IMG/VR virus record: IMGVR_UViG_3300030419_008158
Location: 1-64,000 of that record
DNA length: 64,000 nucleotides
Reading direction: 5' to 3' (one strand)
Shown here piece by piece: positions 16,619-31,764 of this stretch. The translations under genes and the position numbers were made by a program. The notes beneath the pieces were generated by a model, which saw only the letters and a program-made list of their open reading frames with translations, was not told where the DNA came from and made no database searches. The first letter of the stretch is position 1. Every line of letters begins with the position of its first letter.

Positions 16619-17047
16619 TCATTTTTTTGGACTAAACTGTCGAACTTTTTTTTGTGATTCCGCTAGTAGATCAAGGCCTGCTGTATCTCTATATGTTTCA
16701 TCAAATACAATCTCATCAATGTTGCCGTTGACGAGTGCTTTGGCACACATTTTGCAGGGTGATAGCGTGACATACATTTTCTTTTTCTTAGGGTTGTTGT
16801 AGTCAAGCTTTATAAGCGCATTAATTTCTGCATGAATACATCCACTTTGTCCAGGCTCTAAAGAATCAACTGTATTTGATCCACCTGATTGATCTCCGTT
16901 ATACCCAACTGAAAGAACTTGAGTATTGTCATCTGAAACTATCACAGCCCCTACTTTATAGCGAGGATCTATACTTCTTTCAGATATTGCATGTGCTACT
17001 TTCATCCATATGTCATCCCACTCAGGTCTATTTTTCTTTTTTGTCAC
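16619..17047 (-). CDS. dCMP deaminase
   Basis: RPEWDD, VGAVIV, GYNG, HAEINA, PCKMC. Confidence 0.92.
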   Translation of the reverse strand: MTKKKNRPEWDDIWMKVAHAISERSIDPRYKVGAVIVSDDNTQVLSVGYNGDQSGGSNTVDSLEPGQSGCIHAEINALIKLDYNNPKKKKMYVTLSPCKMCAKALVNGNIDEIVFDETYRDTAGLDLLAESQKKVRQFSPKK

Positions 17048-17942: not shown

Positions 17943-17952
17943 ATTTCTCCGT

Positions 17953-18504
17953 TTATCTCAAAAACCCTGTGTGATCATGACATCTTGGTTCATACTTCTC
18001 AGAGCCTCCGACATCAATTTGACTCAATCCTTCCACTTTTGGAACAGTGTAGAAAGCATCTTTGCCGCATATGGGACAAACAGCAGGGCATACTTCTATT
18101 CTGGTAGCCCATGGAAACATTTTTTGAACTTCTGCAAACGTTTCTCCCCTAGCAGATAACTGAATTGTGGAAACAAAAACTGTCTTGCCTTTTGAGAACA
18201 AATCTATTAGCACATCAGACACACCGTCTATCATAAAAGCTTCATCAACTGCAATAATATCACAATCACGTGATGTGTCTAGTATATCGCTCCCAGAAGA
18301 GACACACTTTGCATCCCACTTATATCCTGCATGTGTGACAATGGAGTCAACTAAATATCTATGGTCCATTTTGGGCTTGTAAGCTGCTATCTTTTTAGAC
18401 TGGTATTTTGCTCTGTCGAGTGCTGCTAACATTCTACTGGTTTTTCCGCCAAACATCGGGCCCGTAAACAAGACAAACTCAGGATCAGTCTTGACGCTAC
18501 TCAT
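17953..18504 (-). CDS. tdk: Thymidine kinase
   Basis: GPMFGGKT, AVDEAF, CPICG, YEPRC. Confidence 0.92.
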   Translation of the reverse strand: MSSVKTDPEFVLFTGPMFGGKTSRMLAALDRAKYQSKKIAAYKPKMDHRYLVDSIVTHAGYKWDAKCVSSGSDILDTSRDCDIIAVDEAFMIDGVSDVLIDLFSKGKTVFVSTIQLSARGETFAEVQKMFPWATRIEVCPAVCPICGKDAFYTVPKVEGLSQIDVGGSEKYEPRCHDHTGFLR

Positions 18505-19513
18505 TCGTAAGTTCCCACCATGCAAGAGTTTTGTTCATACCTGACTCGAAGGATTCCTGAGGTGACCATCCCGTGTCAAATCCAATTTTCTGAACTGATG
18601 CGAGTGTGTGCTTTACATCCCCAGGACGCTCTGGGGCATTTTTAACTCCAAACCCTCCTACTTTTTCATCGAGCATTTTTAGAATTTCATTGTTTGAGAC
18701 TGCGCTTTCTGTGCCGACGTTATAATAGCGAAAACCTGAAAGGTTTTTGTGAGAAGCACATGTATACATCGCACTGGCAACATCTGTCACGTAGACCATA
18801 TCTCTAGTTTGCTCGCCATCACCATCTGACCGGAGCATCTCTTTGCTTTTAAGTTTGTCACACCATGCAGCAACAGCAGTTGCATACGGATTATCTCCAG
18901 TGCAACCCGGACCATATACATTAAAAAATCTTAGTGCAACACTATCAACATCATAGAGGTCACTAAACTGCTTCATGAAAAGCTCGCACACAAATTTTTG
19001 AAGCCCGTATGGACTGTTAGGGTTGCATTCAGTATCTTCGTGTGTAGCTGACACTTTTTTACCACCGGAAACATCTCCGTATACAGAAGACGACGATGCA
19101 AATACGAAACGATCAATATTTGCTTTGCGACAAGCGCTTAAAAGCTCAACAGTTTTCATCAAGTTCACTTCAGTTGAAATTGCTGGAAATTCAACACTAA
19201 AGCCCACCCTAGGGTTTGCTGCTAGATGAAAGACATGCGTATATCCGCCACTTACAAAGTGGCTCAAAACTTCAGAATCAACAAAGTCACCGGTAATAAC
19301 AACGGCATCTTTTTTAGATGTTGCCTCGTTCTTGTCAAGCGCTGCCACCAAGCTAGGAATTACTACACGCACCTCCAAACCCTTGTCTGTCAAATTAGAA
19401 ATATCCCCAGAGGATAAATCATCCACAACAGTTACGCTGGCACCCTCATCCACCAATTTTTTTACTAAGTGTGCACCAATAAATCCACACCCGCCTGTCA
19501 CTAACGCCTTCAT
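18497..19513 (-). CDS. NAD-dependent nucleotide-sugar epimerase/dehydratase (extended SDR)
   Basis: TGGCGFIG, HLAA, SSSSVYG, YGLQK, RFFNVYGP, GDGEQTRD. Confidence 0.93.
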   Translation of the reverse strand: MKALVTGGCGFIGAHLVKKLVDEGASVTVVDDLSSGDISNLTDKGLEVRVVIPSLVAALDKNEATSKKDAVVITGDFVDSEVLSHFVSGGYTHVFHLAANPRVGFSVEFPAISTEVNLMKTVELLSACRKANIDRFVFASSSSVYGDVSGGKKVSATHEDTECNPNSPYGLQKFVCELFMKQFSDLYDVDSVALRFFNVYGPGCTGDNPYATAVAAWCDKLKSKEMLRSDGDGEQTRDMVYVTDVASAMYTCASHKNLSGFRYYNVGTESAVSNNEILKMLDEKVGGFGVKNAPERPGDVKHTLASVQKIGFDTGWSPQESFESGMNKTLAWWELTNE

Positions 19514-20442
19514 TTTACCTCCTCATTGTCGTTCCATGATGGCAAATCATATCTAATGTGTGCACAATTTAGACGAACACTAATGTCTATTGCACTCACA
19601 GGTAATTTATAAACCTTCGCAACTTGCAAAGATAAATGACATAAAAATCTCAAATCAACAGAAGCATTTCTATGTACATCTGTGCTACGGAAGACCCCTA
19701 ACACCTTAAGCAACCCATTCCTTATGAGAAAATGTACAGAAGATATACAGGAGTCACTAGAATAGTAAAATCTACGACTGTCTAAGCCTTGCGGTTTGTT
19801 ATAAGGATTGTCGCCTGAAAATTCTTTTGCAAATATGTCTGTTGTTTTCTGCAAAATTTCGCGATAGTAATCCTTTTCACCCGGATGTTCCATTACTCTA
19901 GAAAAATCATTTTCAATTGACGGACTAAACTCTACGTTGATTGTTGCTTCTCCGTCACAAGCTTCAACTGCGTCAATTGTTGCTTTTCCAATAGAGTCGA
20001 TTCCGCCCTTGTCAAATGAGCACAGCCACTCTATGCATGTGTCTGCTAACTCATCTTGCGAAAGTACATCTTCTATCACTAAAACATTTGGAAAAGCTGC
20101 TATCTTTTTTGTTTCATCTTTGAAAATACTGTGCAATCTACAAAGGCTTTTTTTATCTTGAAATTCATCGCCCCGGACGTTCAGCCGCCTTATAAGCTCA
20201 TCTTTTGGCGGAATTACAATAATGACCCTATTGTTCAGATTTAAAAGTTCTCTTTTGAGACCCTGCCTATGACTTTTTGTATCTCTTCCAAACTGTCTTG
20301 CATAACAGATCATTGATAAAAAAGATCGATCTTGAATATTCCATAAAAAATTAGTCTTTTTATGAATTTTTTGATACAACGTTGTCTTGCCTGAAAGGTC
20401 AGGGCCTTCTATTGTCACTATTTGCGTTGGAAACTTTGTCAT
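19510..20442 (-). CDS. dNMP (thymidylate-kinase-like) kinase fused to truncated thymidylate-synthase-fold domain
   Basis: EGPDLSGKTT and QDRS; then SRR...SCISSVHF...FRSTDVHRNASVD...AHI; TAATG coupling to dnaE. Confidence 0.8.
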   Translation of the reverse strand: MTKFPTQIVTIEGPDLSGKTTLYQKIHKKTNFLWNIQDRSFLSMICYARQFGRDTKSHRQGLKRELLNLNNRVIIVIPPKDELIRRLNVRGDEFQDKKSLCRLHSIFKDETKKIAAFPNVLVIEDVLSQDELADTCIEWLCSFDKGGIDSIGKATIDAVEACDGEATINVEFSPSIENDFSRVMEHPGEKDYYREILQKTTDIFAKEFSGDNPYNKPQGLDSRRFYYSSDSCISSVHFLIRNGLLKVLGVFRSTDVHRNASVDLRFLCHLSLQVAKVYKLPVSAIDISVRLNCAHIRYDLPSWNDNEEVK

Positions 20443-23400
20443 TATGCAACTCTTCTTAGTTTGTATGCAGAAGTTGACATTCCCCAATTCGGATCATTAG
20501 AGACATGAGCCATCCAGAGCGTGTATTTGTCAATGTCAGAGTCAAGCTTGCCCCATACTCTCAACCATCCTGTCTTATGATTATTGTCTGTGACTCTGAG
20601 CCTATAAAAATCTTTTCCATTTTTTGTTTTCTTCTTGATCACATCAACAATAACAAACCAGCCGATACCCTTGCCTCCGGCGGGAACATCATGGACTGAG
20701 AGGACATTTTTATCTTTGAGGCGGTTCATCAAGCTTGTCGGAAACAAAAGGTCTCCATCAACTGTGGACGTCAAGTCATAAGAAAGTTCGACTTTTTCAA
20801 CACGACTCCAATCTTCCACATCAAAAAAATCAGATAAAATCTGGTCCAAAAATACTTTTGGTTCTTCGCCTGCCTTTTCGAGCTTTTTTATTTGTGTTTT
20901 AGTTAGGCCGTAAATACCTTTTCTGAGCTTTTCGTAATTTTTTTCATGAGTTAGTGCTTCTAGAAGCTGTCGATGACTCGAAACAGATCCGTTCGTAAAC
21001 TCTTCGAGAGACTGTAAAGCCTCAATTTTGCACAGTGATGAAAGACATGTCTTGTTCATTTTACTATGCTTCCACACGCCATTTTCATCATAAAACATGT
21101 CAACTAAAGACTTATACGGACGCATTTCCAAAATTTCTTTCATCGCGGTAGATCCAATACCTTTGACAGCTGAAAGTGGAGGTACAAATGCATTGATGTC
21201 TTTGGAAAATTCCCATTCTTCTCCCGAATAATTTACATCGATCTGTGCGAAATCAAATCCGTATGACTTTATCTCAGAAATTGCTTTTGACAAATTTGTA
21301 GGGCTATTATTTTCGGATTGAAGGATTGTAGCTAGCCACTCGTGCTCGTAATGGGTGTGCAGCCATGCTGCGTAATACGAATCAATGGCATAAGACACTG
21401 CGTGTGATTTATTGAAACCATACACAGAGAAAGCCTCGATAGTCTTCCAGAGAGCTTCTGTGATACTTCTATCAATGCCATGGAGACTGTAGGCACCTTC
21501 AACAAACTTTTTACGTGCAGCCTCTCGCTCCCCACCTTTTTTGCCCATTGTATCTAGTGACTTCTTAACCAGTGTCTTTCGAAGCTTATCAGACTCACCG
21601 GGCGAGAATCCAGCTAGTTCCACTGCCAGTGTCATAAACTGCTCTTGAAAAACAACAAAGTTAAATGTCGGCCCTAGCACTTTTTCGATCACAGGATGAT
21701 CATACTTGATCTCTGATGCATTCTTTTTAGCTTTTACATATTTCCTATGGACATTGGCTTTTAAGGGTCCTGGGCGGTAAATAGCTGTCAATGCAGCTAA
21801 CTCTGTAATGGTTGTCGGTTTGGCGGCTAGACAGAAACGTCTTGCACCTGTTGCTGTAAACTGAAACACGCCTGTAAATCTACCATCGTGATACACGTGC
21901 TTCCACACCTCAGGATCATCCTGCTGATTATACCGACAATTGAGATGCTCATCAAAGAACTTCTTGATATCAGCAAATGTCGGATTAGGATTTCCTTGCT
22001 TCTTGAGAATGCGACCGATGCAATTTTCAACATCTTTAAGCAGCGTCAATCCAAGAAAGTCAAACTTTAAAAATCCATTGTCTTCAAGATTTCTAAAGTT
22101 CATTCCTTCTGTCCAGGGGGTCTGGAGTTCGCCCCGAACACCGATGATGGGCATTGTAGATGCCAGCTCGTCTGGAGGCGCAATAATTACGCCGCCGGCG
22201 TGTCGACCAATGGATCGATTTTCCATAAATAGTGTTTCAACATGTTTTCCTACCTCTGGATACTTTTCCATAAAGTCGCGGTAGCCCTTAGAGTACTTCA
22301 GACAGTCCTCGTGCTTTAAGACGAAAACAGACTTTTCCTGATTTTCGTCTTTCGCATGTTTCATAACTTCATCTTGTAAAGGTCCTGTCATCTTATTGAC
22401 TTCTGCAAAGTCAATTCCATAAAATTTTGAAATATCTTTAATTAGTGACTTTAGCTTGAGTGTGTTAAAGTTAGATACAGGAATAACTGCGTCGTCGCCA
22501 AATAGTTCACGAGATGCATCAATCAAAGCATCACGATCGCCAGCATCAGTGTCGATATCAGGCCAAGATGTTCTGTGCCTCCCAAGAAATCGAGACCAGA
22601 GCAAACCGTGGGGCAAAGGATCAATTTGTGTAATCCCTAACAAGTAATTGACAAGTGATCCAGCACCTGATCCCCGACCCGGGCCGAAGAGAGTTCGCTT
22701 TTCAGCAAGATGGAAAATCTTGTACATTGCCAAAAAGTACGCTTCGTACCCGAGATACTTGATGTCAGACATCTCCTCCTTCATGCGTGCAACATATTCA
22801 GGTTTCGAAGCAAGACCCTCTCGAATCATAGCTTCTTTGACGAGATCAGCTAGCATTTTAAAAGCAGGCTTTTCAGGTGATCCAAACTTGGGCAGCTTTA
22901 CTGACGTGTCTATCCAAGTGTCTTCGCATTTTTGCCACGTGATGTCGTGAGTACGCTCAATTGCGTCTCGAACATTCTCTTCATGCCCCTTGTAGAAGTC
23001 GTATTCGTCATATCCCGCCTTGAACTCGTCCCACATCTGGTGAGCATTTTTAGGGTACAGCTTGCACTTCAAGTCTTCTTCCTTGGGAAGCATACTTTGA
23101 TCTAGCTTTGCGCCCATCCACCCAAGCTTTTTATAAAGTTCACGAGCCTGCCATTTTTGCGGATCAGGAAAATGAGAATCCGCAGTTGCAATGAGAGGGA
23201 TTCCTGTTTTTTGAGACAGATCCAGCAAGCATCTGTTTGTCAAATGCTGCGCTGGAAGATCGTTAAACTGCATTTCCAAGAAAAAATTGTCTTGTCCAAC
23301 ACAATCAACAAATCTATCTGTCATATTTTCAAGACGATTCATGATAGGATTGTAATCATCTAGATTGTTCATTAGGTCTGGATGAAGCTCATCAAATCTT

Positions 23401-24068
23401 AGACCTCCAAACTGTCGATAGATGAGGCCAGACGCGAGGCCGCCTACACACGCTGTAGAAACAATCAACCCTTCGCCGTGTTCCTTGAGCATTTTGTAGT
23501 CAATCCTAGGAAAACGATAAAAACCGTGCTTGTATGACTTTTTAACTAGTGTGAAAAGATTACCTAGACCTACTTGGTTTTTTGCAACCACGACAAGATG
23601 ATAATATCGCTTCCACTCAGGCTTATTCCCTCTGGAACGCTTTGTTTCCTCTTCGTCCTCAATAACATGGCCGCCTTGCTCGACCTCTTGGTCAGCAATA
23701 ATAACAGTGTTTTCTGTTGCAAGCTTTTCTTTTTGCTTTGAGGATTTGGCATCTTTGACAGCTTGTCGGTGCATGTCATAAGATTCTCGCCAATCTTCTA
23801 GTGACGGGACAAAGTAAAACTCGACGCCATAGATCTGTCGATACTTTCGGCCGGCCTTTTGCATTTTTACTGTGTGTGATCGGGCGTGAGCCAGGCCTGA
23901 GCCGTTACCGTGGTCTGTAAGTGCCCATGAGTCCATTCCTTGAGCTTCTGATAGAACAAAATCGATATGTTCTTTAGGATAACCCAATCCATCAAATGTG
24001 CTAAATGATGAGTGTGCGTGAAGGCCTGTAAAACGATTAGGTCTTCGAAACTTGCTAAATTGTGACAA
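20442..24068 (-). CDS. dnaE: DNA polymerase III alpha subunit (family C)
   Basis: PHP HAHSSFSTFDG/TDHG/DSH; GRGSGAGS; PDIDTD; GRHAGG; KFDFLGL; GFNKSHA; TTG start with AGGAG. Confidence 0.97.
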   Translation of the reverse strand: MSQFSKFRRPNRFTGLHAHSSFSTFDGLGYPKEHIDFVLSEAQGMDSWALTDHGNGSGLAHARSHTVKMQKAGRKYRQIYGVEFYFVPSLEDWRESYDMHRQAVKDAKSSKQKEKLATENTVIIADQEVEQGGHVIEDEEETKRSRGNKPEWKRYYHLVVVAKNQVGLGNLFTLVKKSYKHGFYRFPRIDYKMLKEHGEGLIVSTACVGGLASGLIYRQFGGLRFDELHPDLMNNLDDYNPIMNRLENMTDRFVDCVGQDNFFLEMQFNDLPAQHLTNRCLLDLSQKTGIPLIATADSHFPDPQKWQARELYKKLGWMGAKLDQSMLPKEEDLKCKLYPKNAHQMWDEFKAGYDEYDFYKGHEENVRDAIERTHDITWQKCEDTWIDTSVKLPKFGSPEKPAFKMLADLVKEAMIREGLASKPEYVARMKEEMSDIKYLGYEAYFLAMYKIFHLAEKRTLFGPGRGSGAGSLVNYLLGITQIDPLPHGLLWSRFLGRHRTSWPDIDTDAGDRDALIDASRELFGDDAVIPVSNFNTLKLKSLIKDISKFYGIDFAEVNKMTGPLQDEVMKHAKDENQEKSVFVLKHEDCLKYSKGYRDFMEKYPEVGKHVETLFMENRSIGRHAGGVIIAPPDELASTMPIIGVRGELQTPWTEGMNFRNLEDNGFLKFDFLGLTLLKDVENCIGRILKKQGNPNPTFADIKKFFDEHLNCRYNQQDDPEVWKHVYHDGRFTGVFQFTATGARRFCLAAKPTTITELAALTAIYRPGPLKANVHRKYVKAKKNASEIKYDHPVIEKVLGPTFNFVVFQEQFMTLAVELAGFSPGESDKLRKTLVKKSLDTMGKKGGEREAARKKFVEGAYSLHGIDRSITEALWKTIEAFSVYGFNKSHAVSYAIDSYYAAWLHTHYEHEWLATILQSENNSPTNLSKAISEIKSYGFDFAQIDVNYSGEEWEFSKDINAFVPPLSAVKGIGSTAMKEILEMRPYKSLVDMFYDENGVWKHSKMNKTCLSSLCKIEALQSLEEFTNGSVSSHRQLLEALTHEKNYEKLRKGIYGLTKTQIKKLEKAGEEPKVFLDQILSDFFDVEDWSRVEKVELSYDLTSTVDGDLLFPTSLMNRLKDKNVLSVHDVPAGGKGIGWFVIVDVIKKKTKNGKDFYRLRVTDNNHKTGWLRVWGKLDSDIDKYTLWMAHVSNDPNWGMSTSAYKLRRVA

Positions 24069-24143: not shown

Positions 24144-25106
24144 CTAATAAAATTCAGTCAAGTCGATATTGTTTTCTTTTGCCTGCTCAAGATATTTGAG
24201 TGGATTATAAGAACTGCATCCTTCGCGAATCGACTTCCATGCATCTTGAATTCCTTCGCTCAAGGTAAAATTTGGTTTCCAGCCATACTCCGTTCGAAAC
24301 TTTTCACTTGAAAGCCTGTGATTCCCTAGATAGTCTGTGTTAGGATACCAGTTGACACATCCAGCAAGATCAAATTCTGCCACGTCAGACATCAATTCTA
24401 TGATCGCACCTGTCTCCAGAGGAGTTTCGGCTGAAATATTAAAATCATCATTCCAGACGCTTCCGTGACACGCTACAGCAACTGCATCGCAAAAATCTTC
24501 GACATGCATATAATCTTTGTACTTCGCAGGATCCAAAAACATGTCAATTTTTTCATGTTTGTTTTTGAGATATGAATAAAAAGTCTTAGCGATCAAAGAG
24601 TTCATATCACCCACACCTCCGTAAGCAAATAGTGGGCGCACTATCAACCACTTGTCACAGTGTGTGGTTACGATATTTTCTGCTGCTAGCTTTTGTATCC
24701 CGTATAGTGTTCTTGGGTACTTTGTTGATTCTTCTGTGATCCAATCGTCCTGGTAATTTGGTGTATCATATATTACAGTAGTCCCAATATAACAAACAGG
24801 AATTTTGAGTCTTTTTGCTGCACGACAAATTGTATGTGTCCCTGTCACATTTGAAAGAGTCGATTCACCTGGATTTAATGCAACGACATCAGTCCCAACA
24901 ACAGCAGCATTGTGTATAATAAGGTCAACGCCATGTTTACGCAAGGCGTTGACCCACTCCTCAACTGTATTATTGTAGACGCATACTTCTGTGCCTCGCA
25001 TATTCATATCGTTGTTCAGCGTAACAGCTTCGCTGCCGAGCTTTAACAAAGACTTGGGCAAATTTTGTGCAATAAAGCCTTCTTCGCCTGTGATGAAAAT
25101 ACGCAT
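24144..25106 (-). CDS. NAD-dependent nucleotide-sugar epimerase/reductase (extended SDR)
   Basis: TGEEGFIA, HNAAVVG, YGIQK, KDYMHVED. Confidence 0.88.
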   Translation of the reverse strand: MRIFITGEEGFIAQNLPKSLLKLGSEAVTLNNDMNMRGTEVCVYNNTVEEWVNALRKHGVDLIIHNAAVVGTDVVALNPGESTLSNVTGTHTICRAAKRLKIPVCYIGTTVIYDTPNYQDDWITEESTKYPRTLYGIQKLAAENIVTTHCDKWLIVRPLFAYGGVGDMNSLIAKTFYSYLKNKHEKIDMFLDPAKYKDYMHVEDFCDAVAVACHGSVWNDDFNISAETPLETGAIIELMSDVAEFDLAGCVNWYPNTDYLGNHRLSSEKFRTEYGWKPNFTLSEGIQDAWKSIREGCSSYNPLKYLEQAKENNIDLTEFY

Positions 25107-25108
25107 TT

Positions 25109-25612
25109 TTACTCGATCGCGTCAGAATAGGGCTCAACAAGAAGCTGCTTTGCTTCGAAGCATCTGTTCAAATAGTCTTCGAGCTCCTCAATGCTGGTAC
25201 AAACCTTTACACCGCTTCTTGCAAGCATCAAGTTGAACTTAGCCCCCTCAGGCAACCCACCACAGTAATACACAATTGGCTTTTGATGTGCAAAGGCGAA
25301 GCCGGCTTCCCAAATAGTTCCAATATCCTTGTCTCTTGTATTGACAATAAGAAAGTTAGCTGCAGTAATTTCTCTGAGATTTCCTAAAAAGGTTTCATCT
25401 TGTGTTTCTTTGGGTGCATCAGGTGGACAGACAAAAATTCTTCTTGGACTTGCAAGATCGATCCAGTCTCTGTCATCACAAACTTTTTCTAGCTGGTCTA
25501 GTTCTTCAGCTTGTGTTGGATTGAACCATCCGGCTGCCAAATATACTTTTTGGGCAACAACTGGATTCTCTGTATTCTCTGTATTCTCTGTATTCTCTGT
25601 ATTCTCAGACAT
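25109..25612 (-). CDS. Nucleoside 2-deoxyribosyltransferase family protein
   Basis: VYLAAGWF, DIGTIWEAGFA, KPI, NLML; GGAGG before ATG 25612. Confidence 0.88.
   Translation of the reverse strand: MSENTENTENTENTENPVVAQKVYLAAGWFNPTQAEELDQLEKVCDDRDWIDLASPRRIFVCPPDAPKETQDETFLGNLREITAANFLIVNTRDKDIGTIWEAGFAFAHQKPIVYYCGGLPEGAKFNLMLARSGVKVCTSIEELEDYLNRCFEAKQLLVEPYSDAIE
25565..25606. repeat. 9-bp coding tandem repeat (ENT), about 4.7 copies
   Basis: attctctgt x4 + attctc. Confidence 0.9.
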
Positions 25613-25721
25613 TTCGCTTTCCTCCAAAATCTGTTATTTCGTTTTGCTTGTTGTTAGTAGTCATTTTTTCTCCTAAAGCTTATCCTTATAGCCTGGACTT
25701 GCTTGAATTTCATAATTTTCT

Positions 25722-26696
25722 TTAGACATTTTCTTCTTTTTTCCAAAAAATATTAGGAAGAGATGCATAAAAATCATGACGACGATCATGCTCCCACCCC
25801 CTTTTACAAACCGCTTTGTGAAAATTTCTTCCCCAACTCCCGGGTTTTTCAACAGGCCCTTCACCAAAGTCATACAGATTAAAGTGTCCGACCGATGTAT
25901 CATATTTTGTCCAGTAAGTACTATACACAAAATTATCACTAATTCTGTTTAGATAGCTGTCGAGCCACGGAAAAGGTGTGCCTGTCTCTTTACTGTCTTC
26001 AGCCTGTATGTGTTCGACAACTTCATAAAAAGTCCCCGCGTCATAAGCGTCTAGCTGGTCACCTATATGAAGATTCTTTAGGCCCATCTCTTTCTTGACT
26101 CTTTCAATTAGCCTTACACTCAGCCCGCTGACTTCACTAACGTATACGTCTGTTTCAGGTAAGTGATAGGCAAACCAAATAGAAGAAATTCCAATCCCTG
26201 CCCCCACATCCAATATTGTCTTGGGCACATAACCTAAGTGATCCCACCACATTAAAGTGTGAAATATCGGAGACGTATTTCTCATTTTGGCTTTGTCAAT
26301 CATCCCAGTCACATTTAAGCCGCACGATACAGTTTCAAACACATAATAGGGATCATCATAAATTGACACATCAAAATTTTGGCGCCAGCGCTGGAGCATG
26401 TCATTGATAATCTTGCTATCGCGATCACCCAGCTGGTCTAACTCTTCCTTGGAAAACTCTGACTTTAATTCATCTTTATAAATTTCTAGAAGTCGCTCAT
26501 AACTTAGGCCTGGGATTGATGGATCGTAGCCTCTTGTTTGTAAAAACTTTCCACCGTAATGATGCTCTTTATTGCCCCACTGGACATACTCGAATTTTTT
26601 AGTTCGCCTTCTTCCAGTGGGTGGCGTGTGCTGATAGTCGAAGTACTTTTTCTCTTTTCCTTCGACTTCCCAGGTTTTTAGAGCATTATCATCCAT
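25722..26696 (-). CDS. Class I SAM-dependent methyltransferase
   Basis: ILDVGAGIG, acidic residue after strand 2 (VSEVS), YEVVEHI. Confidence 0.8.
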   Translation of the reverse strand: MDDNALKTWEVEGKEKKYFDYQHTPPTGRRRTKKFEYVQWGNKEHHYGGKFLQTRGYDPSIPGLSYERLLEIYKDELKSEFSKEELDQLGDRDSKIINDMLQRWRQNFDVSIYDDPYYVFETVSCGLNVTGMIDKAKMRNTSPIFHTLMWWDHLGYVPKTILDVGAGIGISSIWFAYHLPETDVYVSEVSGLSVRLIERVKKEMGLKNLHIGDQLDAYDAGTFYEVVEHIQAEDSKETGTPFPWLDSYLNRISDNFVYSTYWTKYDTSVGHFNLYDFGEGPVEKPGSWGRNFHKAVCKRGWEHDRRHDFYASLPNIFWKKEENV

Positions 26697-27657
26697 TCTC
26701 GTAAGCTGCCTTCAATGCCTGGAACTCTTCCATTAAGTCACGCCACATAGTTGTAAAAACTTTCTCTCCAGTTCCATGTGTCCCGTTGAGCTCTTCACGT
26801 CGACAGGGATAAATTGTGTCGGCCTCATGATACTCAAACGTATCATTCTTTGGTTCAGGCTGGTACAAGTTTGTACCTCGGCTAATCCACTTATCACCTT
26901 CCTTTACGCGGAACGTATTGATATAATGGAAATCCGGTTTATCAAAATTGAACACTTGAGTCAGCTCAGGAATTGCCTTGCATGCGGCGATGGCCATCTC
27001 AGCAGCTAAAATATTGTCAGCTGCAGGCTGAATCTGCACGTCTTGTCTCTGACGGACGAATCCGATCAAATCTTTAAGATTAAGTCGCATATAGTAAAAA
27101 GAAGTCATGCATTTCGGCAAAATCATTCTTGCGTCCATCATAGAAATAACTTTAGAATCAGTCATATCTGCATACAGCTGCTTAGACTGTCTAACAATCT
27201 CCTTGTAGCGCTCCAGGTACTCGGGCGAGTTTTCGACAGACTCCGGAACAACGGCAGGATCATCTCTAAGATCGCGGTCGCCGGTACATTGGGCTGCAAA
27301 AGATCCTGCTCGATGTCGAATAATATGAGTTACTTCCTGAAAAGATAGGCCAGACAATCTAAACGTGAACCCCAGACATTCCATGGGAGTTGGAAGCGCA
27401 CGAAACTGCAAAACATCTAGAAGATTTTTACTCTTGATGCTATCCGGTACCTCGTCAGGCCTGATTTCACTAGGGTCGTCGGCCCAAGTAGCCTTTACGT
27501 AATGCCACGCGACATCTCGTGCTTGATTTGTTGTGGGGGCGTCAACCAATTCAACATTAAGAGCTTCTAAATTATTACAAAACTCTGTATCAAACGGTCT
27601 ACCAAATTTTAGATCCATCGGAAGTTCGATAGGCTCTAGATCATTATTTAACGGCAT
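26689..27657 (-). CDS. ThyX-like flavin-dependent enzyme (non-canonical motif)
   Basis: FTFRLSG, HIIRHRAGSFAAQCTGDR, DARMILP, NLKDLIGFVRQR. Confidence 0.82.
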   Translation of the reverse strand: MPLNNDLEPIELPMDLKFGRPFDTEFCNNLEALNVELVDAPTTNQARDVAWHYVKATWADDPSEIRPDEVPDSIKSKNLLDVLQFRALPTPMECLGFTFRLSGLSFQEVTHIIRHRAGSFAAQCTGDRDLRDDPAVVPESVENSPEYLERYKEIVRQSKQLYADMTDSKVISMMDARMILPKCMTSFYYMRLNLKDLIGFVRQRQDVQIQPAADNILAAEMAIAACKAIPELTQVFNFDKPDFHYINTFRVKEGDKWISRGTNLYQPEPKNDTFEYHEADTIYPCRREELNGTHGTGEKVFTTMWRDLMEEFQALKAAYENG

Positions 27658-27953
27658 TATTCTGCTCCTTTGTTGTTGGGCCGATTTGGATAGTATTCTT
27701 TTTTGGTCAAAAAATCAATCAAAATATCAGTTGCATTACGAAGACCACTTCTGTTGAATTCCGTATCTCCTACGCGAAGCCACGTCTCCTCTAAAAACTC
27801 ATCAAGCTCTTGACCGCACATCTTCAAGACAGGATCACTTAGAGCAGACAGATCATATTCTGGATTTTCCATCAACTCAAGAACGTAATGCGATACTCTC
27901 GACGAGTGATGCAACGTCGCCTTCTTCCCAATCGAATGCATAGATTCCATCAT
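27657..27953 (-). CDS. Hypothetical protein (start uncertain)
   Basis: TAATG coupling to ThyX-like gene. Confidence 0.5.
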   Translation of the reverse strand: MMESMHSIGKKATLHHSSRVSHYVLELMENPEYDLSALSDPVLKMCGQELDEFLEETWLRVGDTEFNRSGLRNATDILIDFLTKKEYYPNRPNNKGAE

Positions 27954-28818
27954 GATTCATAACTCCCATGTTGTAATTTCTTTTCGGCACAAGACACGGC
28001 ACACCGTGCATAACATACTCAGAGGCATGTTTAGGTGAGTCATCAATTGCACACACAACTTTTCCCTGCTTGTATGCTTCGAGCGAAGATACTGCAATAT
28101 ACTTTTCTGAACTTAGCTGCACAGAGTCAAATTCTTTTACATACTTGTCAAGCCATTCATATGTCTCGTGCATACACTTTAGCTCGGTTTCTGGGCGTGC
28201 TGTCAAAATATGAATCCAATACCCTTTTTTTCTGAGGGTTTTTAGACTTTTGATCACGTTATCACAAGTATCTATTTTTCTTAGACTTCCAGAATCAATA
28301 AACTCAATAAGCAGCTGGTCGCCTGACTTTCCTTCTACTGGTTTGCTTAGAAAATATTCATTTGATCTATGATCGACATTGCATCCCGGGTATGTTTCAT
28401 TTACCCAATCATAGAAATTTTGTCTAAATCTGGCAATTACGTCATCAACATCAACAACGACAACTTTTTGTCCGCTCCACTTTGATAGATTTTTTTCTGT
28501 TCGGACTCTTAGATTAGCATCTCTAGACTCAAACGCACTAATTGCATCATTTTCGTCATAGTCCCATAAATTTAGTATAGACAAGCAGTATCGATAAACA
28601 TCCATCGTTTCAAATAGAATATTCTGCATATGTGTAGGAGTGATGTTCGGCCTGTGCTCTCGATAGTGGACTGAATCTGCCAGCTGCGTGAGCTCGCTTT
28701 GCATCGCAAGACAAAGTGTCTTGTGCTTCTCAATTTTCTCCTGCTCAGACATTTTGTCTGAATTGTAGAAATTTCTAGAAAAATTCTTTTGCTTGTCAAG
28801 CATTTTCTTTAAGTCCAC
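27877..28818 (-). CDS. All-alpha NTP pyrophosphatase-like domain fused to HAD 5'(3')-deoxyribonucleotidase-like domain
   Basis: SELTQL...FETMDV; VVDVDDV, LTAR, IDDSP. Confidence 0.78.
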   Translation of the reverse strand: MDLKKMLDKQKNFSRNFYNSDKMSEQEKIEKHKTLCLAMQSELTQLADSVHYREHRPNITPTHMQNILFETMDVYRYCLSILNLWDYDENDAISAFESRDANLRVRTEKNLSKWSGQKVVVVDVDDVIARFRQNFYDWVNETYPGCNVDHRSNEYFLSKPVEGKSGDQLLIEFIDSGSLRKIDTCDNVIKSLKTLRKKGYWIHILTARPETELKCMHETYEWLDKYVKEFDSVQLSSEKYIAVSSLEAYKQGKVVCAIDDSPKHASEYVMHGVPCLVPKRNYNMGVMNHDGIYAFDWEEGDVASLVESIALRS

Positions 28819-28830: not shown

Positions 28831-29061
28831 CTAAAAAGGATTGTTGACAAGATAAGCGACGTACTCTATAATCTCTTGTTCGTCGCTATCTTCGCAATCC
28901 TTGTAAGATTTACCCATCTTTGTCTTGATACAGCGCCAAATATGAGCGTATGGGTTTCTTGCAGAATGATTTGGACTATCAGGAAGATTTCCTTCTAATG
29001 CTTTTCCGCCAAGCGCAACTGCTTGTCGTATTCTTTCAGCAACTTCAGGAGACATCATCAA
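28831..29061 (-). CDS. Hypothetical protein
   Basis: In-operon; RNPYAHIW..IK..MG.SYKD. Confidence 0.6.
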   Translation of the reverse strand: MMMSPEVAERIRQAVALGGKALEGNLPDSPNHSARNPYAHIWRCIKTKMGKSYKDCEDSDEQEIIEYVAYLVNNPF

Positions 29062-29444
29062 TAGCCGCCATTAATTCTATCTAAATTTATTTGGCCTTTT
29101 TTCATGTACATTTTATACATTTCTTCATAAGAAATTCCTGAGTACAGGAGAATGCCTATTAGATAATGCAAAACATCGCTTAGCTCCTCTGTGTAAGCGT
29201 CTCGATCAAAATCACTTATTTCAGTGCTTCTATGACTTTTGGCGTTCTTAAGAAGCATATTAGATTCAAATAGCTCATGCATACATTCGTGTGCAAGAGA
29301 TTTTAGAAATTGTTGACTCTTTTTTTCAGAAAGATCGAGTGGAAAATCAGGAAAGTCTCTTTTGTCACGAAGCAGCTCAAGAAACTCTTTTTGCTGCTCA
29401 AACATAATTTCAAACTTTCCCATATCACTCATCAGAAGACTCAT
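29058..29444 (-). CDS. Dimeric dCTPase/dUTPase (T4 gp56-like, all-alpha NTP-PPase)
   Basis: HELFE, EELSDVLHY, YMKKGQINLDRINGGY C-terminus. Confidence 0.8.
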   Translation of the reverse strand: MSLLMSDMGKFEIMFEQQKEFLELLRDKRDFPDFPLDLSEKKSQQFLKSLAHECMHELFESNMLLKNAKSHRSTEISDFDRDAYTEELSDVLHYLIGILLYSGISYEEMYKMYMKKGQINLDRINGGY

Positions 29445-29690: not shown

Positions 29691-30512
29691 TCATTTTTGA
29701 ACATCTGGCACCCAGTGCGTAGTTCGTCCGTCGTCTGTCTTTTCTTTAATAACTTTATGACCGAACGGGTCTTTTTTCAAACCATACACCATAAATTCCA
29801 GTGACGCACTTCCCTCGAGCCCATCTGTGTCTTTGTAATCTTTCAAAGAAGCACCTCTAGAATTGTATGCTTGACGCAAAACATCTCTTACAGCAGTGTG
29901 CAAGTCAGATATTTCTTTCGTCGACAAAGAACCTACTAGCCTGTGAGGAGAAATTTTTGCACGATAAAGCGACTCTGCTTTTACGTAATTTCCCACCCCA
30001 GAAACAACAGACTGTGTCATTAAAGATTTAGCAACAGACCAGTGGGGCTTTTTGTCTAAAGATGATGAAAACTTTTCAAACGAGACAGAATCATTCAACA
30101 TATCAGGGCCCAAGCTTTGAAGCTTTTCCAAAAATTTTCTCTTGCCTTTTATGATCTTGATAGTTCCAAAGTTTCTCGTGTCAACAAAAAAAATAGGTTC
30201 GCCTTCATTGAAATCAAATCTAACTCTTGCATGTTTATGATTTCTATCTTTAGACCATGTTCCTGTCATTCCAAGCGTATTCAAGAGAAACATTTCGTTC
30301 GAAAGCATCCAAAAAATAAGCTTTCCTTTTACACCAATACCCGTTACTTTTACAGCGCCGTCTGATTGAATTTTTTCCCTGATCATTTCTAAGCCCGGAA
30401 TTTGACTTTTGGTGTATCTTCCGGAAATTGGCACAATATTCACAATTTTTCTTAGGCCTACTTTTTGTGAAAGACCCTCACTGATAATTCTAACTTCAGC
30501 ACCCTCTGGCAT
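29691..30512 (-). CDS. Fpg/Nei DNA glycosylase-AP lyase with zincless finger
   Basis: True start MPEGAEV (GAGGTG SD); KGK, LGMTG, DTRNFG, LGPD, GVGNY, GRTTHW; no Cys4 finger. Confidence 0.92.
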   Translation of the reverse strand: MPEGAEVRIISEGLSQKVGLRKIVNIVPISGRYTKSQIPGLEMIREKIQSDGAVKVTGIGVKGKLIFWMLSNEMFLLNTLGMTGTWSKDRNHKHARVRFDFNEGEPIFFVDTRNFGTIKIIKGKRKFLEKLQSLGPDMLNDSVSFEKFSSSLDKKPHWSVAKSLMTQSVVSGVGNYVKAESLYRAKISPHRLVGSLSTKEISDLHTAVRDVLRQAYNSRGASLKDYKDTDGLEGSASLEFMVYGLKKDPFGHKVIKEKTDDGRTTHWVPDVQK

Positions 30513-30528
30513 ATAACACCTCTGTTGT

Positions 30529-31764
30529 TTAGTCTCTATCGTTTCTAAAACAAACAAATGTAGGAAATCTAAGTGAGCCATCAGGAGTTTCTTCCTGGTA
30601 TCTTACTTCAATAGTTCTTCCTAAAAATGCTTCGGGTGTGTTCCAGATTTTTTCTCTAAGAATGTCAGAAAATCCGGATCCTACCTGAACTTTTACACCT
30701 TTGAAGTTGACAACTACAGACCCTAATTTGCCTGCATGTTTTCCAGTTCCCTCAAGAAGATTTTCAATCTCTAGGTCCACATCATGAAATGCTTTGAGTT
30801 TCATAACTTCAGGACCTCTTCCAAATTTGTAAGGTGCATCCAAATCCTTGACCATCGCACCTTCGTATCCTTGCCCTACATACTCATCATGCAAAACTTT
30901 GATCGCAGAATAGTTGGCATCAACAATAACACGAGGAACTATTTTCAAGTAATTTGCTGTCTTTTTTTGAACCTCAATTTTCAAAATATCGTATCTTTCT
31001 TTGCATGAAAGCTTAGAATTTCTTGACTTCCACTCACTCAAAGGAACATAGTCAAAAATTGAAAGATATGTCCCGTCAGTGACAACATTTTCTTTTCGAT
31101 ATGCTTGGCGCATCAAAGCAATAAAGTCTTCTCCCATAATTTCCCCATCATAGCAACCACTAGGTAACTGTGACAGCTCTGCGCCAATAGTAGTATCGAA
31201 ATTAGTAATCAGCTTGCCTGACCTCGCATACAAAAGGGCTTCTCCATTTTCCACAATTGCGAAACACCTAATTCCGTCAAGCTTGGGTTCAACAGCAACT
31301 TTTGCTTTTCCCAAAAGTCTTTTTTCTTCAAATTTCTGTGCAAGAGCTACATCAAAAGTAGGAACTAATCCTGGAAAAACCTTGTTGACTGTCTTGATTG
31401 ATGCTCCAATGGCCAAATGTTTTTTAAGCACTTTTCTCATCCATTTTTCATCTTCTTTTTGAACGCTGGAAAAGCATGTATAGACACGTTCAATTGCAGC
31501 ATTTCCTGTGACTTTTCTTGAAGCGCACTCGTCCAAGACAGTAAAAAATTCACTCCAGGCACGGTCTTCAGAAAGAGGAAATTGAAGCCTAGATTTTACT
31601 TTAGGAATCTTAACAACATTGAAAGGAGTGAATGGGTCTAAACCATATTTTAGAGCTTTTCTTAGCAAAATACTCTCTTTGTTTTCCTCTAAGATGTCTT
31701 TTTTGTCATTTGTGCCTGAAGTTTCTTTTATTTTCTGCAATATTTCCGTTATTGACATTTTCAC
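30529..31764 (-). CDS. ATP-dependent DNA ligase
   Basis: EPKLDGIR, DGEI, EGAMVK, KLK, VGSGF, SLRFP. Confidence 0.94.
   Translation of the reverse strand: MKMSITEILQKIKETSGTNDKKDILEENKESILLRKALKYGLDPFTPFNVVKIPKVKSRLQFPLSEDRAWSEFFTVLDECASRKVTGNAAIERVYTCFSSVQKEDEKWMRKVLKKHLAIGASIKTVNKVFPGLVPTFDVALAQKFEEKRLLGKAKVAVEPKLDGIRCFAIVENGEALLYARSGKLITNFDTTIGAELSQLPSGCYDGEIMGEDFIALMRQAYRKENVVTDGTYLSIFDYVPLSEWKSRNSKLSCKERYDILKIEVQKKTANYLKIVPRVIVDANYSAIKVLHDEYVGQGYEGAMVKDLDAPYKFGRGPEVMKLKAFHDVDLEIENLLEGTGKHAGKLGSVVVNFKGVKVQVGSGFSDILREKIWNTPEAFLGRTIEVRYQEETPDGSLRFPTFVCFRNDRD

What the first reader, a model, noticed from the sequence alone, without database searches (positions are those of the whole stretch)
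26689..27657. ThyX homolog with altered catalytic motif
Seen: RHRAGSFAAQCTGDR where the canonical motif is RHRx7SxR, so Ser becomes Cys and Arg becomes Gly. The upstream GHxSxxEH segment reads RALPTPMEC, lacking the folate-stacking His. There are long N- and C-terminal extensions. FAD-binding RHR, ARxxLP and the distal Arg remain. Inference: a flavoenzyme doing something other than dUMP methylation in the modification pathway.
Basis: partly seen in the sequence, partly recalled or inferred. Interest (0 to 1): 0.72.

Follow-up and report, generated by a model that had tools for sequence, protein, structure and literature searches.

The report
Non-canonical ThyX paralog in phage nucleotide module
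A marine jumbo phage carries, besides a normal flavin-dependent thymidylate synthase, a second, virus-specific copy with a rebuilt catalytic loop that always travels with nucleotide-trimming and kinase genes, so it probably makes a modified DNA building block rather than ordinary thymidylate.

Summary
ORF 26689-27657(-) encodes a 322-aa protein with the ThyX fold (Pfam Thy1 68 bits; AF2 pLDDT 95.5; best PDB matches PolB and ThyX). It keeps RHR, ARxxLP and the distal Arg. The catalytic network is replaced: His53->Leu88, Asn85->Ala121, Ser88->Cys124, Arg90->Gly126, Tyr91->Asp127.

This is a family signature, not a lesion. Asp127 is 94-100% conserved and Cys124 85%, across a well-supported, essentially viral clade. 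The protein fails NCBI's thyX equivalog cut-off (42 vs 87.9 bits). The same 284-kb genome also has a canonical ThyX that scores 174.5 bits. Four of four large related phage contigs also carry both copies.

The gene sits in a module that recurs in phages using PolIII-alpha, PolA or PolB. Its parts are an NDT-like enzyme, a 5'-deoxynucleotidase (YfbR-HD, or NT5C-HAD fused to MazG in this lineage), a small Tmk-like kinase and a ~150-aa unknown.

Best reading (about 0.5): a neofunctionalised flavin-dependent C5 one-carbon transferase making a non-thymine pyrimidine dNMP. I favour 5-hydroxymethyl-dUMP; a dCMP substrate is the close rival. A plain dTMP synthase with an alternative active site is not excluded (about 0.25). 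No activity was or could be tested here.

The parts
26689..27657 (-). ThyX-like protein (ThyXL), 322 aa. The ThyX core is ~aa 33-235, with N- and C-terminal extensions.
   Evidence: Pfam Thy1 1.2e-18, 68 bits. AF2 with alignment A1 gives pLDDT 95.5. Foldseek best matches are PolB 4p5b and ThyX structures. NCBIfam thyX 42.3 bits, below the 87.9 cut-off.
27274..27318 (-). Altered ThyX motif and active-site loop, RHRAGSFAAQCTGDR (aa 114-128): C124, G126 and D127 replace Ser88, Arg90 and Tyr91.
   Evidence: Translation; alignment to T. maritima ThyX; family conservation.
27376..27402 (-). RALPTPMEC (aa 86-94), replacing the canonical GHxSxFEH. Leu88 stands in place of the folate/flavin-stacking His53; Thr90 and Glu93 are kept.
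   Evidence: Translation; alignments.
25109..25627 (-). Nucleoside 2-deoxyribosyltransferase-like protein (NDT fold). The catalytic Glu context WEAG aligns to WELG of a solved NDT.
   Evidence: Pfam Nuc_deoxyrib_tr 5e-13; PDB 6evs alignment. Next to ThyXL in 77 of 81 related loci and in GR1, L084, L088, L104, L107, L108, L109.
27877..28818 (-). Fusion of an all-alpha MazG/dUTPase_2-like NTP pyrophosphatase (N-terminal) with an NT5C/HAD 5'-deoxynucleotidase (C-terminal).
   Evidence: Pfam dUTPase_2 2.9e-5 and NT5C 1.2e-5; PHROG 5'-3' deoxyribonucleotidase. Present in 64 of 81 loci. Other lineages carry a YfbR-like HD nucleotidase in its place.
29058..29444 (-). Second MazG/dUTPase_2-like NTP pyrophosphohydrolase.
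   Evidence: Pfam dUTPase_2 7e-6; phrog_12184; 72 of 81 loci.
19510..20487 (-). Fusion protein. The N-half (aa ~22-155) is a small Tmk-like P-loop kinase; the C-half (aa ~202-311) is homologous to the ~150-aa unknown protein that follows ThyXL in GR1.
   Evidence: phrog_761 thymidylate kinase 2e-10. All-against-all BLAST with kinases next to ThyXL in L084, L088, L104, L107, L108, L109 and GR1. The profile's best PDB hit is SPbeta YorR, followed by thymidylate and deoxynucleoside kinases.
25722..26696 (-). Class-I methyltransferase-like protein inserted between ThyXL and NDT. It is lineage-specific and overlaps the ThyXL stop by 8 nt.
   Evidence: Only weak Pfam MTS/GidB hits. Only 7 homologs among 5.8 billion proteins; both contigs examined (for one of the 7 homologs) show the gene right after ThyXL, with NDT following in the one contig that extends that far. 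1 of 81 loci.
24144..25106 (-). Extended SDR (NAD-dependent epimerase/dehydratase, RmlD-like), usually next to the NDT gene.
   Evidence: Pfam Epimerase 6.6e-26; NCBIfam hits only below cut-off; 60 of 81 loci.
27657..27953 (-). 98-aa protein of unknown function directly upstream. Its stop overlaps the ThyXL start by 1 nt.
   Evidence: ORF list; no family hit; similar gene in 4 of 81 loci by BLAST.
20442..24068 (-). Phage DnaE-type DNA polymerase III alpha, flanking the module.
   Evidence: phrog_405 4e-228. Adjacent in related loci and in GR1, L088, L104, L107.
29691..30581 (-). Fpg/Nei-family DNA glycosylase, often at the upstream edge of the module.
   Evidence: Pfam H2TH and Fapy_DNA_glyco; 47 of 81 loci.
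16619..18525 (-). Context genes for pyrimidine deoxynucleotide supply: dCMP deaminase (16619-17062), DHH/DHHA1 phosphoesterase (17028-17942), thymidine kinase (17953-18525).
   Evidence: Pfam.

Best explanation
ThyXL is a neofunctionalised, virus-specific paralog of flavin-dependent thymidylate synthase. It keeps the ThyX fold and the arginines that hold FAD and a pyrimidine nucleoside monophosphate. Its active-site loop and the His that gates folate and flavin have been rebuilt.

Proposed mechanism (inferred, not shown):
1. MazG/dUTPase_2-like enzymes, helped by dCMP deaminase, supply the pyrimidine dNMP.
2. ThyXL uses reduced flavin to relay a methylene from CH2-THF onto C5.
3. Because the Ser88/Tyr91/Arg90/His53 network is replaced by Cys124/Asp127/Gly126/Leu88, the reaction does not end in flavin-mediated reduction to a methyl group. 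The methylene intermediate is instead captured by water. The product I favour is 5-hydroxymethyl-dUMP. The same chemistry on dCMP, with Cys124 as C6 nucleophile and Asp127 reading N3/N4, is the close alternative.
4. The small Tmk-like kinase phosphorylates the product for use by the phage polymerase.
5. The 5'-deoxynucleotidase and the NDT-like enzyme remove or recycle the competing canonical nucleotide.

The canonical ThyX elsewhere in the genome continues to make dTMP, which would give partial rather than total base replacement.
For: Shown here:
- ThyX fold with high confidence.
- R114/H115/R116, R177 and R204 kept, while H53, N85, S88, R90 and Y91 equivalents are all replaced. The replacements are conserved family-wide.
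- Below the thyX equivalog cut-off at 42.3 vs 87.9 bits, while the genome's other copy scores 174.5.
- Both copies, and no ThyA, in 4 of 4 large related contigs.
- A separate, supported clade in a quick ML tree: SH-aLRT 100 for 50 representatives, with canonical ThyX including the own paralog in another clade.
- Essentially viral: the Atlas clusters are 86-92% viruses, and a motif scan of 185,579 species genomes gave one real hit, on a phage-like MAG contig.
- Conserved module across phages with PolIII-alpha, PolA or PolB: NDT-like, 5'-deoxynucleotidase (with non-orthologous displacement, YfbR-HD vs NT5C-HAD), small Tmk-like kinase and a ~150-aa unknown.
- Glycosyltransferases fused or nearby in some lineages: a weak GT2 hit in P0142, a GT in GR1, a GT8 in L086.
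- An intein and an HNH insertion in two family members. Such elements usually target conserved, functional genes (my own knowledge).

From the literature:
- Ser88 and Tyr91 are strictly conserved and critical. Tyr91 mutation slows flavin oxidation 1000-fold. Arg90 H-bonds Tyr91. His53 stacks folate or FADH- and is held by Tyr91 and Asn85 (PMC11940539).
- ThyX intermediates formed after methylene transfer add water to give hydroxymethyl-dUMP on acid quench (PMC4913046).
- Phage SP-15, whose thymine is ~50% hypermodified, also has two Thy1 proteins. Its authors proposed the divergent one as the hmdUMP synthase (PMC5977210).

From my own knowledge, unverified here: hmU- and U-DNA Bacillus phages induce a dTMP 5'-nucleotidase, and T4 pairs a ThyA-type thymidylate synthase (Td) with a ThyA-type dCMP hydroxymethylase plus its own dNMP kinase.
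Against: - No enzymatic, cofactor or DNA-composition data exist. The FAD co-fold job was not run by the tool.
- Geobacillus phage GR1 has ThyXL as its only thymidylate-synthase homolog together with a dUTPase. That fits an ordinary dTMP synthase equally well.
- The genome keeps a canonical ThyX and a thymidine kinase, which is awkward for thymine replacement unless it is partial.
- No DNA glycosyltransferase or hmU-kinase-type hypermodification gene was found in the window's own module. The genome's GT genes lie 100 kb away.
- Cys124 is not invariant (85%).
- The NDT-like and nucleotidase partners could equally serve deoxynucleoside salvage.
- SP-15 gp130 is not detectably the same family, so it is only an analogy.
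Confidence: 0.5

Rival explanations
1. ThyXL is a bona fide dTMP synthase that reaches the same product with a different active-site solution (Cys/Asp in place of Ser/Tyr/Arg/His). The module is then a thymidylate-supply and salvage unit: dNMP -> dN (nucleotidase) -> dU (NDT with uracil) -> dUMP (kinase) -> dTMP (ThyXL) -> dTDP (Tmk-like).
For: FAD- and nucleotide-binding arginines are kept. GR1 has no other thymidylate-synthase homolog and does have a dUTPase. The partners (dUTPase_2-like, NT5C, Tmk-like, TK) are all thymidine-centred. Inteins and homing endonucleases are, from my own knowledge, typical of phage thymidylate synthase and RNR genes.
Against: Residues reported as strictly conserved and critical are all replaced (PMC11940539). 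In PolB, Tyr99Ala abolishes activity (PMC5003785). The protein fails the thyX equivalog cut-off. A canonical ThyX is maintained alongside it in 5 of 5 marine genomes or contigs examined, which argues against redundancy.
Confidence: 0.25
2. ThyXL acts on dCMP, not dUMP. It would be a flavin-dependent dCMP C5-hydroxymethylase or methylase using Cys124 as a covalent C6 nucleophile and Asp127 to read or protonate N3/N4. That makes it the ThyX-fold counterpart of T4 gp42 working next to Td. This is a sub-case of the best explanation, scored separately.
For: In PolB the Arg equivalent to Arg90 H-bonds pyrimidine O4 (PMC5003785). Here it is Gly126, and the neighbouring residue is a near-invariant Asp. 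A Cys appears at the C6-proximal Ser88 position. Coexistence with a canonical ThyX is then natural. MazG-like enzymes could be dCTPases. From my own knowledge, ThyA Asn177->Asp switches specificity to dCMP, and cytosine-C5 enzymes use a Cys plus an acid.
Against: The partner genes are thymidine-centred (NT5C, Tmk-like, TK, dUTPase_2-like). The phage has a dCMP deaminase that would drain dCMP. No structure with ligand is available to place Asp127.
Confidence: 0.18
3. ThyXL and the NDT-fold enzyme make a free modified pyrimidine base or nucleoside rather than a DNA precursor. This would parallel the ThyA-type CMP hydroxymethylase plus NDT-fold N-glycosidase pairs of mildiomycin and bacimethrin biosynthesis, with the window's methyltransferase playing the BcmC role.
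For: ThyXL and NDT are tightly adjacent (77 of 81 loci). A methyltransferase-like gene sits exactly between them in this sublineage. The NDT-fold enzyme DNPH1 hydrolyses 5hmdUMP (PMC10483697, PMC12751057; abstracts listed). The MilA/MilB and BcmA-C analogy is from my own knowledge.
Against: The module is embedded in the replication gene block next to the replicative polymerase and includes a nucleotide kinase. The methyltransferase is rare, so it is not core. The NDT-like protein resembles true transferases (6evs) more than DNPH1.
Confidence: 0.07
4. ThyXL is catalytically inactive and serves as a nucleotide- or flavin-binding regulatory or scaffold subunit.
For: Several canonical catalytic residues are lost. 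RHR is not strictly kept in all family members, with RYR, RTR and RQR variants.
Against: There is strong, family-specific conservation of new residues in the active-site loop (D127, C124, G126) and of all substrate and cofactor arginines. An intein and an HNH insertion are present.
Confidence: 0.05

Closest known systems
Canonical flavin-dependent thymidylate synthase ThyX (e.g. T. maritima TM0449; NCBIfam TIGR02170)
   Same: Same fold (TM by target 0.7-0.79). Same Pfam family, Thy1. RHR, ARxxLP Arg and distal Arg are kept, as are Thr55, Glu58, Asn163 and Gln180 equivalents.
   Different: His53, Asn85, Ser88, Arg90 and Tyr91 equivalents are replaced by Leu, Ala, Cys, Gly and Asp. About 32 extra N-terminal and 87 extra C-terminal residues. 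Scores 42.3 bits against a cut-off of 87.9. It coexists with a true ThyX in the same genome.
PolB, the UMP/dUMP C5-methylase of polyoxin biosynthesis (PDB 4p5a/4p5b)
   Same: Best Foldseek hit (E 5e-11). It is an example of a ThyX paralog recruited for a product other than the cell's own dTMP.
   Different: PolB keeps the canonical Glu94-Ser96-Ala97-Arg98-Tyr99 peptide, and Tyr99Ala kills activity (PMC5003785); the window protein has Ala-Cys-Thr-Gly-Asp there. PolB lies in a Streptomyces antibiotic cluster, whereas this gene lies in a phage replication and nucleotide module. The structural score does not separate PolB from ordinary ThyX.
ThyA-family pyrimidine hydroxymethylases of phages (T4 gp42 dCMP hydroxymethylase; SPO1-type dUMP hydroxymethylase)
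   Same: The proposed logic is the same: a thymidylate-synthase paralog beside the true synthase, fed by an NTP pyrophosphatase and followed by a dedicated dNMP kinase (own knowledge; module evidence).
   Different: The fold is unrelated. There is no PF00303 match in this genome. Catalysis would be flavin-dependent. Activity is not shown.
Bacillus phage SP-15 gp130 (divergent Thy1 protein, proposed hmdUMP synthase)
   Same: A phage with two Thy1 proteins. The divergent one sits next to an NDT gene and an SDR, with an HD 5'-nucleotidase elsewhere in the genome. The DNA is known to carry hypermodified thymine (PMC5977210; annotation).
   Different: No detectable sequence relationship: BLASTP finds nothing and hhalign gives 9.9% probability. 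gp130 lacks RHR. Its function is also only hypothesised.
Geobacillus phage GR1 'FAD-dependent thymidylate synthase' (UDY80709.1)
   Same: A true family member: 46% identity over 98% of the length, with the same Cys-x-Gly-Asp motif class. NDT, HD, small kinase, ~150-aa unknown and PolIII-alpha are nearby.
   Different: Its host is a thermophilic Firmicute. The genome is 79 kb with no second ThyX. It is the only cultured carrier found, and nothing is published on its DNA chemistry.

Membership tests
ThyX / flavin-dependent thymidylate synthase (functional equivalog) | ThyX (Thy1) fold and Pfam PF02511 match | tested here: met
   68 bits against a cut-off of 24.8; AF2 model pLDDT 95.5 matching ThyX structures.
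ThyX / flavin-dependent thymidylate synthase (functional equivalog) | Score above the curated NCBIfam TIGR02170 equivalog cut-off (87.9 bits) | tested here: not met
   42.3 bits. The genome's other copy scores 174.5 and phage PBC1 ThyX scores 170.1.
ThyX / flavin-dependent thymidylate synthase (functional equivalog) | ThyX motif RHRx7SxR, with the following Tyr (Ser88, Arg90, Tyr91 in T. maritima) | tested here: not met
   RHR is present, but Ser->Cys124, Arg->Gly126 and Tyr->Asp127. The roles of these residues are given in PMC11940539.
ThyX / flavin-dependent thymidylate synthase (functional equivalog) | Conserved His (His53) that stacks on folate or reduced flavin | tested here: not met
   Leu88 at that position, and Leu in 91% of the family.
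ThyX / flavin-dependent thymidylate synthase (functional equivalog) | Arginines binding the FAD phosphates and the nucleotide (Arg78, Arg80, Arg147, Arg174) | tested here: met
   R114, R116, R177 and R204 are invariant or nearly so.
ThyX / flavin-dependent thymidylate synthase (functional equivalog) | FAD-bound homotetramer that converts dUMP to dTMP with CH2-THF and NADPH, and complements thyA | not testable with these tools
No biochemical data were found in the searched literature.
PolB-type UMP/dUMP methylase | Canonical substrate-recognition peptide Glu-x-Ser-Ala-Arg-Tyr, with an essential Tyr99 | tested here: not met
   The window protein has A122-Q-C124-T-G126-D127. The PolB residues are from PMC5003785.
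PolB-type UMP/dUMP methylase | PolB-specific Loop 1 and Loop 2 with Tyr124 and Tyr126 | not tested
   No residue-level structural alignment to PolB was available. Foldseek scores do not separate PolB from ThyX.
ThyA-family pyrimidine hydroxymethylase | Thymidylat_synt fold (PF00303) | tested here: not met
   No PF00303 match anywhere in the genome. The resemblance is only in the proposed pathway logic.
Viral ThyXL clade defined here (LPTxxE ... RH(R)xxSFSAQC[ST]GD[RK]) | Signature motifs, ~300-330 aa with N- and C-terminal extensions, and placement inside the supported clade | tested here: met
   Alignments. The clade of 50 representatives has SH-aLRT 100 in a quick tree.
Viral ThyXL clade defined here (LPTxxE ... 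RH(R)xxSFSAQC[ST]GD[RK]) | Linkage to an NDT-like gene, a 5'-deoxynucleotidase and a small Tmk-like kinase | tested here: met
   Window genes at 25109-25627, 27877-28818 and 19510-20487. The same linkage is seen in other lineages.

The most novel reading that the evidence does not exclude
ThyXL would be the first ThyX-fold enzyme whose natural product is not a 5-methyl pyrimidine. It would be a flavin-relay C5-hydroxymethylase, possibly using a covalent Cys124/Asp127 mechanism, on dUMP or dCMP. It would be the committed step of a previously unrecognised five-gene DNA-base-replacement pathway. That pathway would be widespread in abundant uncultured marine jumbo phages and in smaller phages with unrelated polymerases. 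If so, many marine viral genomes would carry a modified pyrimidine that sequencing does not reveal.
Probability: 0.35. Interest if true: 0.85.

Novelty: new variant of a known kind. Interest (0 to 1): 0.7.

Why it matters
All known phage pyrimidine hydroxymethylases, and the dCMP methylases I know of, are ThyA homologs. ThyX homologs are annotated wholesale as thymidylate synthase. A large virus-specific ThyX clade with a rebuilt catalytic loop, kept next to a canonical ThyX and locked into a conserved gene set, points to different chemistry. That set comprises a nucleotidase, an NDT-like enzyme, a kinase and an unknown protein. It would imply an unrecognised flavin-dependent route to modified DNA precursors.

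The family has more than 1000 members in ocean metagenomes. A modified base in these phages would affect host-defence evasion, metagenomic and nanopore analysis, and enzyme discovery for nucleotide chemistry. It also offers a natural experiment on the roles of Ser88, Tyr91 and His53 in ThyX, which is an antibiotic target. A cultured carrier, Geobacillus phage GR1, makes the question directly testable.

Tried and rejected
- Single-sequence AF2 gave pLDDT 37 and was useless. The alignment-based model replaced it.
- Complex prediction with two copies plus FAD was counted but not folded, so it gives no evidence either way.
- The search for related loci on genome contigs failed with alignments A1 and A2, because no stretch was conserved enough.
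- The first degenerate DNA pattern was too degenerate. The second found 7 loci, of which only L104 encodes a relative; the other six are chance matches.
- SP-15 gp130 was considered as a family member and rejected.
- Homology between the window's methyltransferase-like gene and the CMAS-like methyltransferase next to ThyXL in L088 was rejected (BLASTP E 0.23).
- The window methyltransferase as a core module part was rejected, since it has only 7 homologs.
- A glycosyltransferase within the window's own module was not found. The GT2 and GT1 genes lie at 125-149 kb.
- Megablast of the region against cultured phages found nothing.
- Sequencing-run search returned only assembled marine metagenome contigs and no raw reads. 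Base-level signs of modification could not be examined.
- Literature searches for a characterised non-canonical ThyX in phages found only the SP-15 hypothesis.
- The careful ML tree did not finish in the time allowed, so only the quick tree with SH-aLRT support is reported.
Full report
**1. What is there**

The window is the first 64 kb of a 284,429-bp IMG/VR virus record that CheckV rates as complete. Nearly all genes lie on the minus strand. They encode a phage replication and nucleotide block: PolIII-alpha, topoisomerase II subunits, ligase, RNR, DnaB, UvsX and GroEL.

ORF 26689-27657(-) encodes 322 aa. More than 1000 homologs of 320-330 aa from marine metagenomes align end to end, so the gene call is sound.

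**2. It is a ThyX-fold protein with a rebuilt catalytic centre**

Fold evidence:
- Pfam Thy1 matches at 68 bits over aa 44-214.
- An AF2 model built on a 100-sequence alignment reaches pLDDT 95.5.
- The model matches only ThyX-type structures. PolB 4p5b is the best hit, followed by M. tuberculosis, PBCV-1 and T. maritima ThyX.
- In AlphaFold DB the shared core is residues ~33-235. That leaves ~32 N-terminal and ~87 C-terminal residues as confident extensions.

Residue map from the phmmer alignment to T. maritima ThyX:

| T. maritima ThyX | Window protein | Status |
|---|---|---|
| Arg78-His79-Arg80 | R114-H115-R116 | kept |
| Arg147 | R177 | kept |
| Arg174 | R204 | kept |
| Thr55, Glu58, Asn163, Gln180 | equivalents present | kept |
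| His53 | Leu88 | replaced |
| His59 | Cys94 | replaced |
| Gln75 | His111 | replaced |
| Asn85 | Ala121 | replaced |
| Glu86 | Ala122 | replaced |
| Ser88 | Cys124 | replaced |
| Arg90 | Gly126 | replaced |
| Tyr91 | Asp127 | replaced |

A recent structural study describes the lost residues as one functional network (PMC11940539):
- Ser88 and Tyr91 are strictly conserved and critical.
- Tyr91 mutation slows flavin oxidation 1000-fold.
- Arg90 H-bonds Tyr91.
- His53 stacks on folate or FADH- and is held by Tyr91 and Asn85.

In PolB the equivalent Arg98 binds the phosphate and pyrimidine O4, and Tyr99Ala abolishes activity (PMC5003785).

So the cofactor- and nucleotide-anchoring residues survive, while the residues tied to methylene transfer and reduction do not.

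**3. It is a family signature and a stable paralog**

Conservation:
- Among 50%-identity cluster representatives the loop reads RH(R)xxSFSAQC[ST]GD[RK], and the His segment reads LPTxxE.
- Asp127 is 94-100% conserved, Cys124 85%, Gly126 83% and Leu88 91%.

Phylogeny:
- A quick ML tree puts the query and Geobacillus phage GR1 in a clade of 50 representatives with SH-aLRT 100.
- Canonical ThyX proteins, including this genome's own, fall in a different clade.
- The careful tree search did not finish, so this is the quick tree only.

Equivalog scores against NCBIfam thyX (cut-off 87.9 bits):

| Protein | Score (bits) |
|---|---|
| Window ThyXL | 42.3 |
| GR1 ThyXL | 49.9 |
| Canonical ThyX of this genome (~261 kb) | 174.5 |

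The canonical copy carries HKHTSTLEH, RHRx7SRRY and ARGVLP. There is no ThyA in the genome. Four of four large related contigs (147-237 kb, 44-77% complete) also carry both copies and no ThyA. GR1 carries only ThyXL.

The family is essentially viral:
- The Atlas clusters are 86-92% viruses.
- A motif scan of 185,579 species genomes gave one real hit, on a phage-like MAG contig.
- One member contains an intein and another an HNH endonuclease.

**4. The gene belongs to a conserved module**

In 81 related IMG/VR loci the neighbours recur as follows:

| Neighbour | Loci of 81 |
|---|---|
| NDT-like gene, usually directly adjacent | 77 |
| MazG/dUTPase_2-like gene | 72 |
| MazG + NT5C-HAD fusion | 64 |
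| Extended SDR | 60 |
| Fpg/Nei glycosylase | 47 |

PolIII-alpha follows in the loci that reach far enough.

Distant family members in unrelated phages show the same partners:
- L088 and L107 (PolIII-alpha phages), L108 and L109 (PolA phages), L084 (PolB phage) and GR1 all have an NDT-like gene. All but L084 also have a YfbR-like HD 5'-deoxynucleotidase close to ThyXL.
- The nucleotidase is an HD enzyme in those lineages and an NT5C-HAD domain here. This non-orthologous displacement argues that the nucleotidase activity itself is required.
- All-against-all BLAST shows a small Tmk-like P-loop kinase family (EGxDxSGKTT) in all of these loci and in the N-half of window ORF 19510-20487.
- The C-half of that ORF matches the ~150-aa unknown protein that follows ThyXL in GR1.
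- The kinase profile hits SPbeta YorR first, then thymidylate and deoxynucleoside kinases.
- The genome has no other Tmk and no trimeric dUTPase.
- Glycosyltransferases are fused or nearby in some lineages. P0142 has a weak, below-cut-off GT2 hit in its N-terminal region, GR1 has a GT, and L086 has a GT8.
- The window's methyltransferase-like gene is a rare insertion. It has 7 homologs in total. In the two contigs examined, both carrying one of those homologs, it follows ThyXL directly; NDT comes next in the contig that extends that far.

**5. Interpretation**

What is shown: the fold, the residue replacements, their conservation, the paralogy, the viral distribution and the synteny.

What is inferred: ThyXL binds flavin and a pyrimidine dNMP, transfers a one-carbon unit to C5, and yields something other than dTMP.

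I favour 5-hydroxymethyl-dUMP for these reasons:
- ThyX intermediates formed after methylene transfer already add water to give hydroxymethyl-dUMP when the reaction is derailed (PMC4913046).
- The lost residues govern the later steps of the reaction.
- The partners are thymidine-centred, and a dedicated kinase is present.
- Glycosyltransferases appear in some lineages.
- Phage SP-15, with ~50% hypermodified thymine, offers a parallel. It has two Thy1 proteins, and the divergent one sits next to an NDT and an SDR. That protein is not detectably homologous to ThyXL.

A dCMP substrate is a serious alternative. The O4-binding Arg is lost, an invariant Asp appears next to it, and a Cys sits at the C6-proximal position. 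Together these resemble the Cys-plus-acid solution of cytosine-C5 enzymes. This reading would also explain the coexistence with a canonical ThyX, as with T4 Td and gp42.

A plain dTMP synthase remains possible, chiefly because GR1 has no other thymidylate-synthase homolog.

**6. Comparison and novelty**

ThyXL belongs to the ThyX (Thy1) superfamily, but it fails the tested defining features of a ThyX equivalent and of PolB. I found no paper characterising such a protein. The only related statement is the untested SP-15 hypothesis. I rate it a new variant of a known kind, with a realistic chance of new chemistry. GR1 provides a cultured test system, but nothing is published on its DNA chemistry.

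Noticed in passing
window 47229-63355 (-): Three very large ORFs (1042, 2313 and 1845 aa) have no Pfam match at E<=1e-4. They lie in a stretch with higher G+C (45-47%) than the ~40% of the rest of the window.
   Followed up: partly
window 19510-20487 (-): This ORF fuses two families that are separate genes next to ThyXL in other phages: a small Tmk-like P-loop kinase and a ~150-aa unknown related to phrog_35203.
   Followed up: yes
window 25722-26696 (-): A methyltransferase-like gene with only 7 homologs among 5.8 billion proteins. In both contigs examined it lies right after ThyXL, with NDT following where the contig is long enough, and here it overlaps the ThyXL stop by 8 nt. The order echoes the hydroxymethylase, methyltransferase and glycosidase trio of bacimethrin biosynthesis (the analogy is from my own knowledge).
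   Followed up: partly
window 3967-5580 (-): A phage-encoded GroEL-type chaperonin (phrog_5725, E 2.7e-127).
   Followed up: no
window 46058-47176 (-) and 20442-24068 (-): A short family-A DNA polymerase-like ORF (372 aa, palm region only) coexists with a full DnaE-type PolIII-alpha.
   Followed up: no
window 5734-6570 (-) and 41382-42338 (-): Two paralogous 5'-3' exonuclease (FEN-like) genes in one window.
   Followed up: no
window 14170-14859 (-): An ORF with an Fe/Mn superoxide dismutase C-terminal domain.
   Followed up: no
window 29691-30581 (-): An Fpg/Nei-family DNA glycosylase at the edge of the module, found in 47 of 81 related loci. It could be repair, or it could be linked to base replacement.
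   Followed up: partly
L105 4926-7479 (Xanthomonas phage Carpasina gp49-gp47): Another non-canonical ThyX variant (RTR...QQETSRA, no stacking His, 75.4 bits, below the thyX cut-off). It lies next to a polynucleotide-kinase-like gene and a FabG-like SDR. An SDR also sits beside the divergent Thy1 of SP-15 and beside the NDT gene here.
   Followed up: partly
L104 (contig PBHZ01000014.1): A contig binned into a Methanobacteriota MAG carries ThyXL (43% identity), NDT, MazG and a PolIII-alpha 63% identical to the window's. It is either a mis-binned phage contig or a hint about the host.
   Followed up: no
P0261 and P0150 (family members): One ThyXL gene is interrupted by an intein. Another carries an HNH/His-Me homing endonuclease domain.
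   Followed up: no
G000:C1 125-149 kb (outside the window): A cluster of GT1 and GT2 glycosyltransferases far from the ThyXL module. Two SDR sugar-nucleotide enzymes lie inside the window (18497-19513 and 24144-25106). Their target, cell surface or DNA, is unknown.
   Followed up: no
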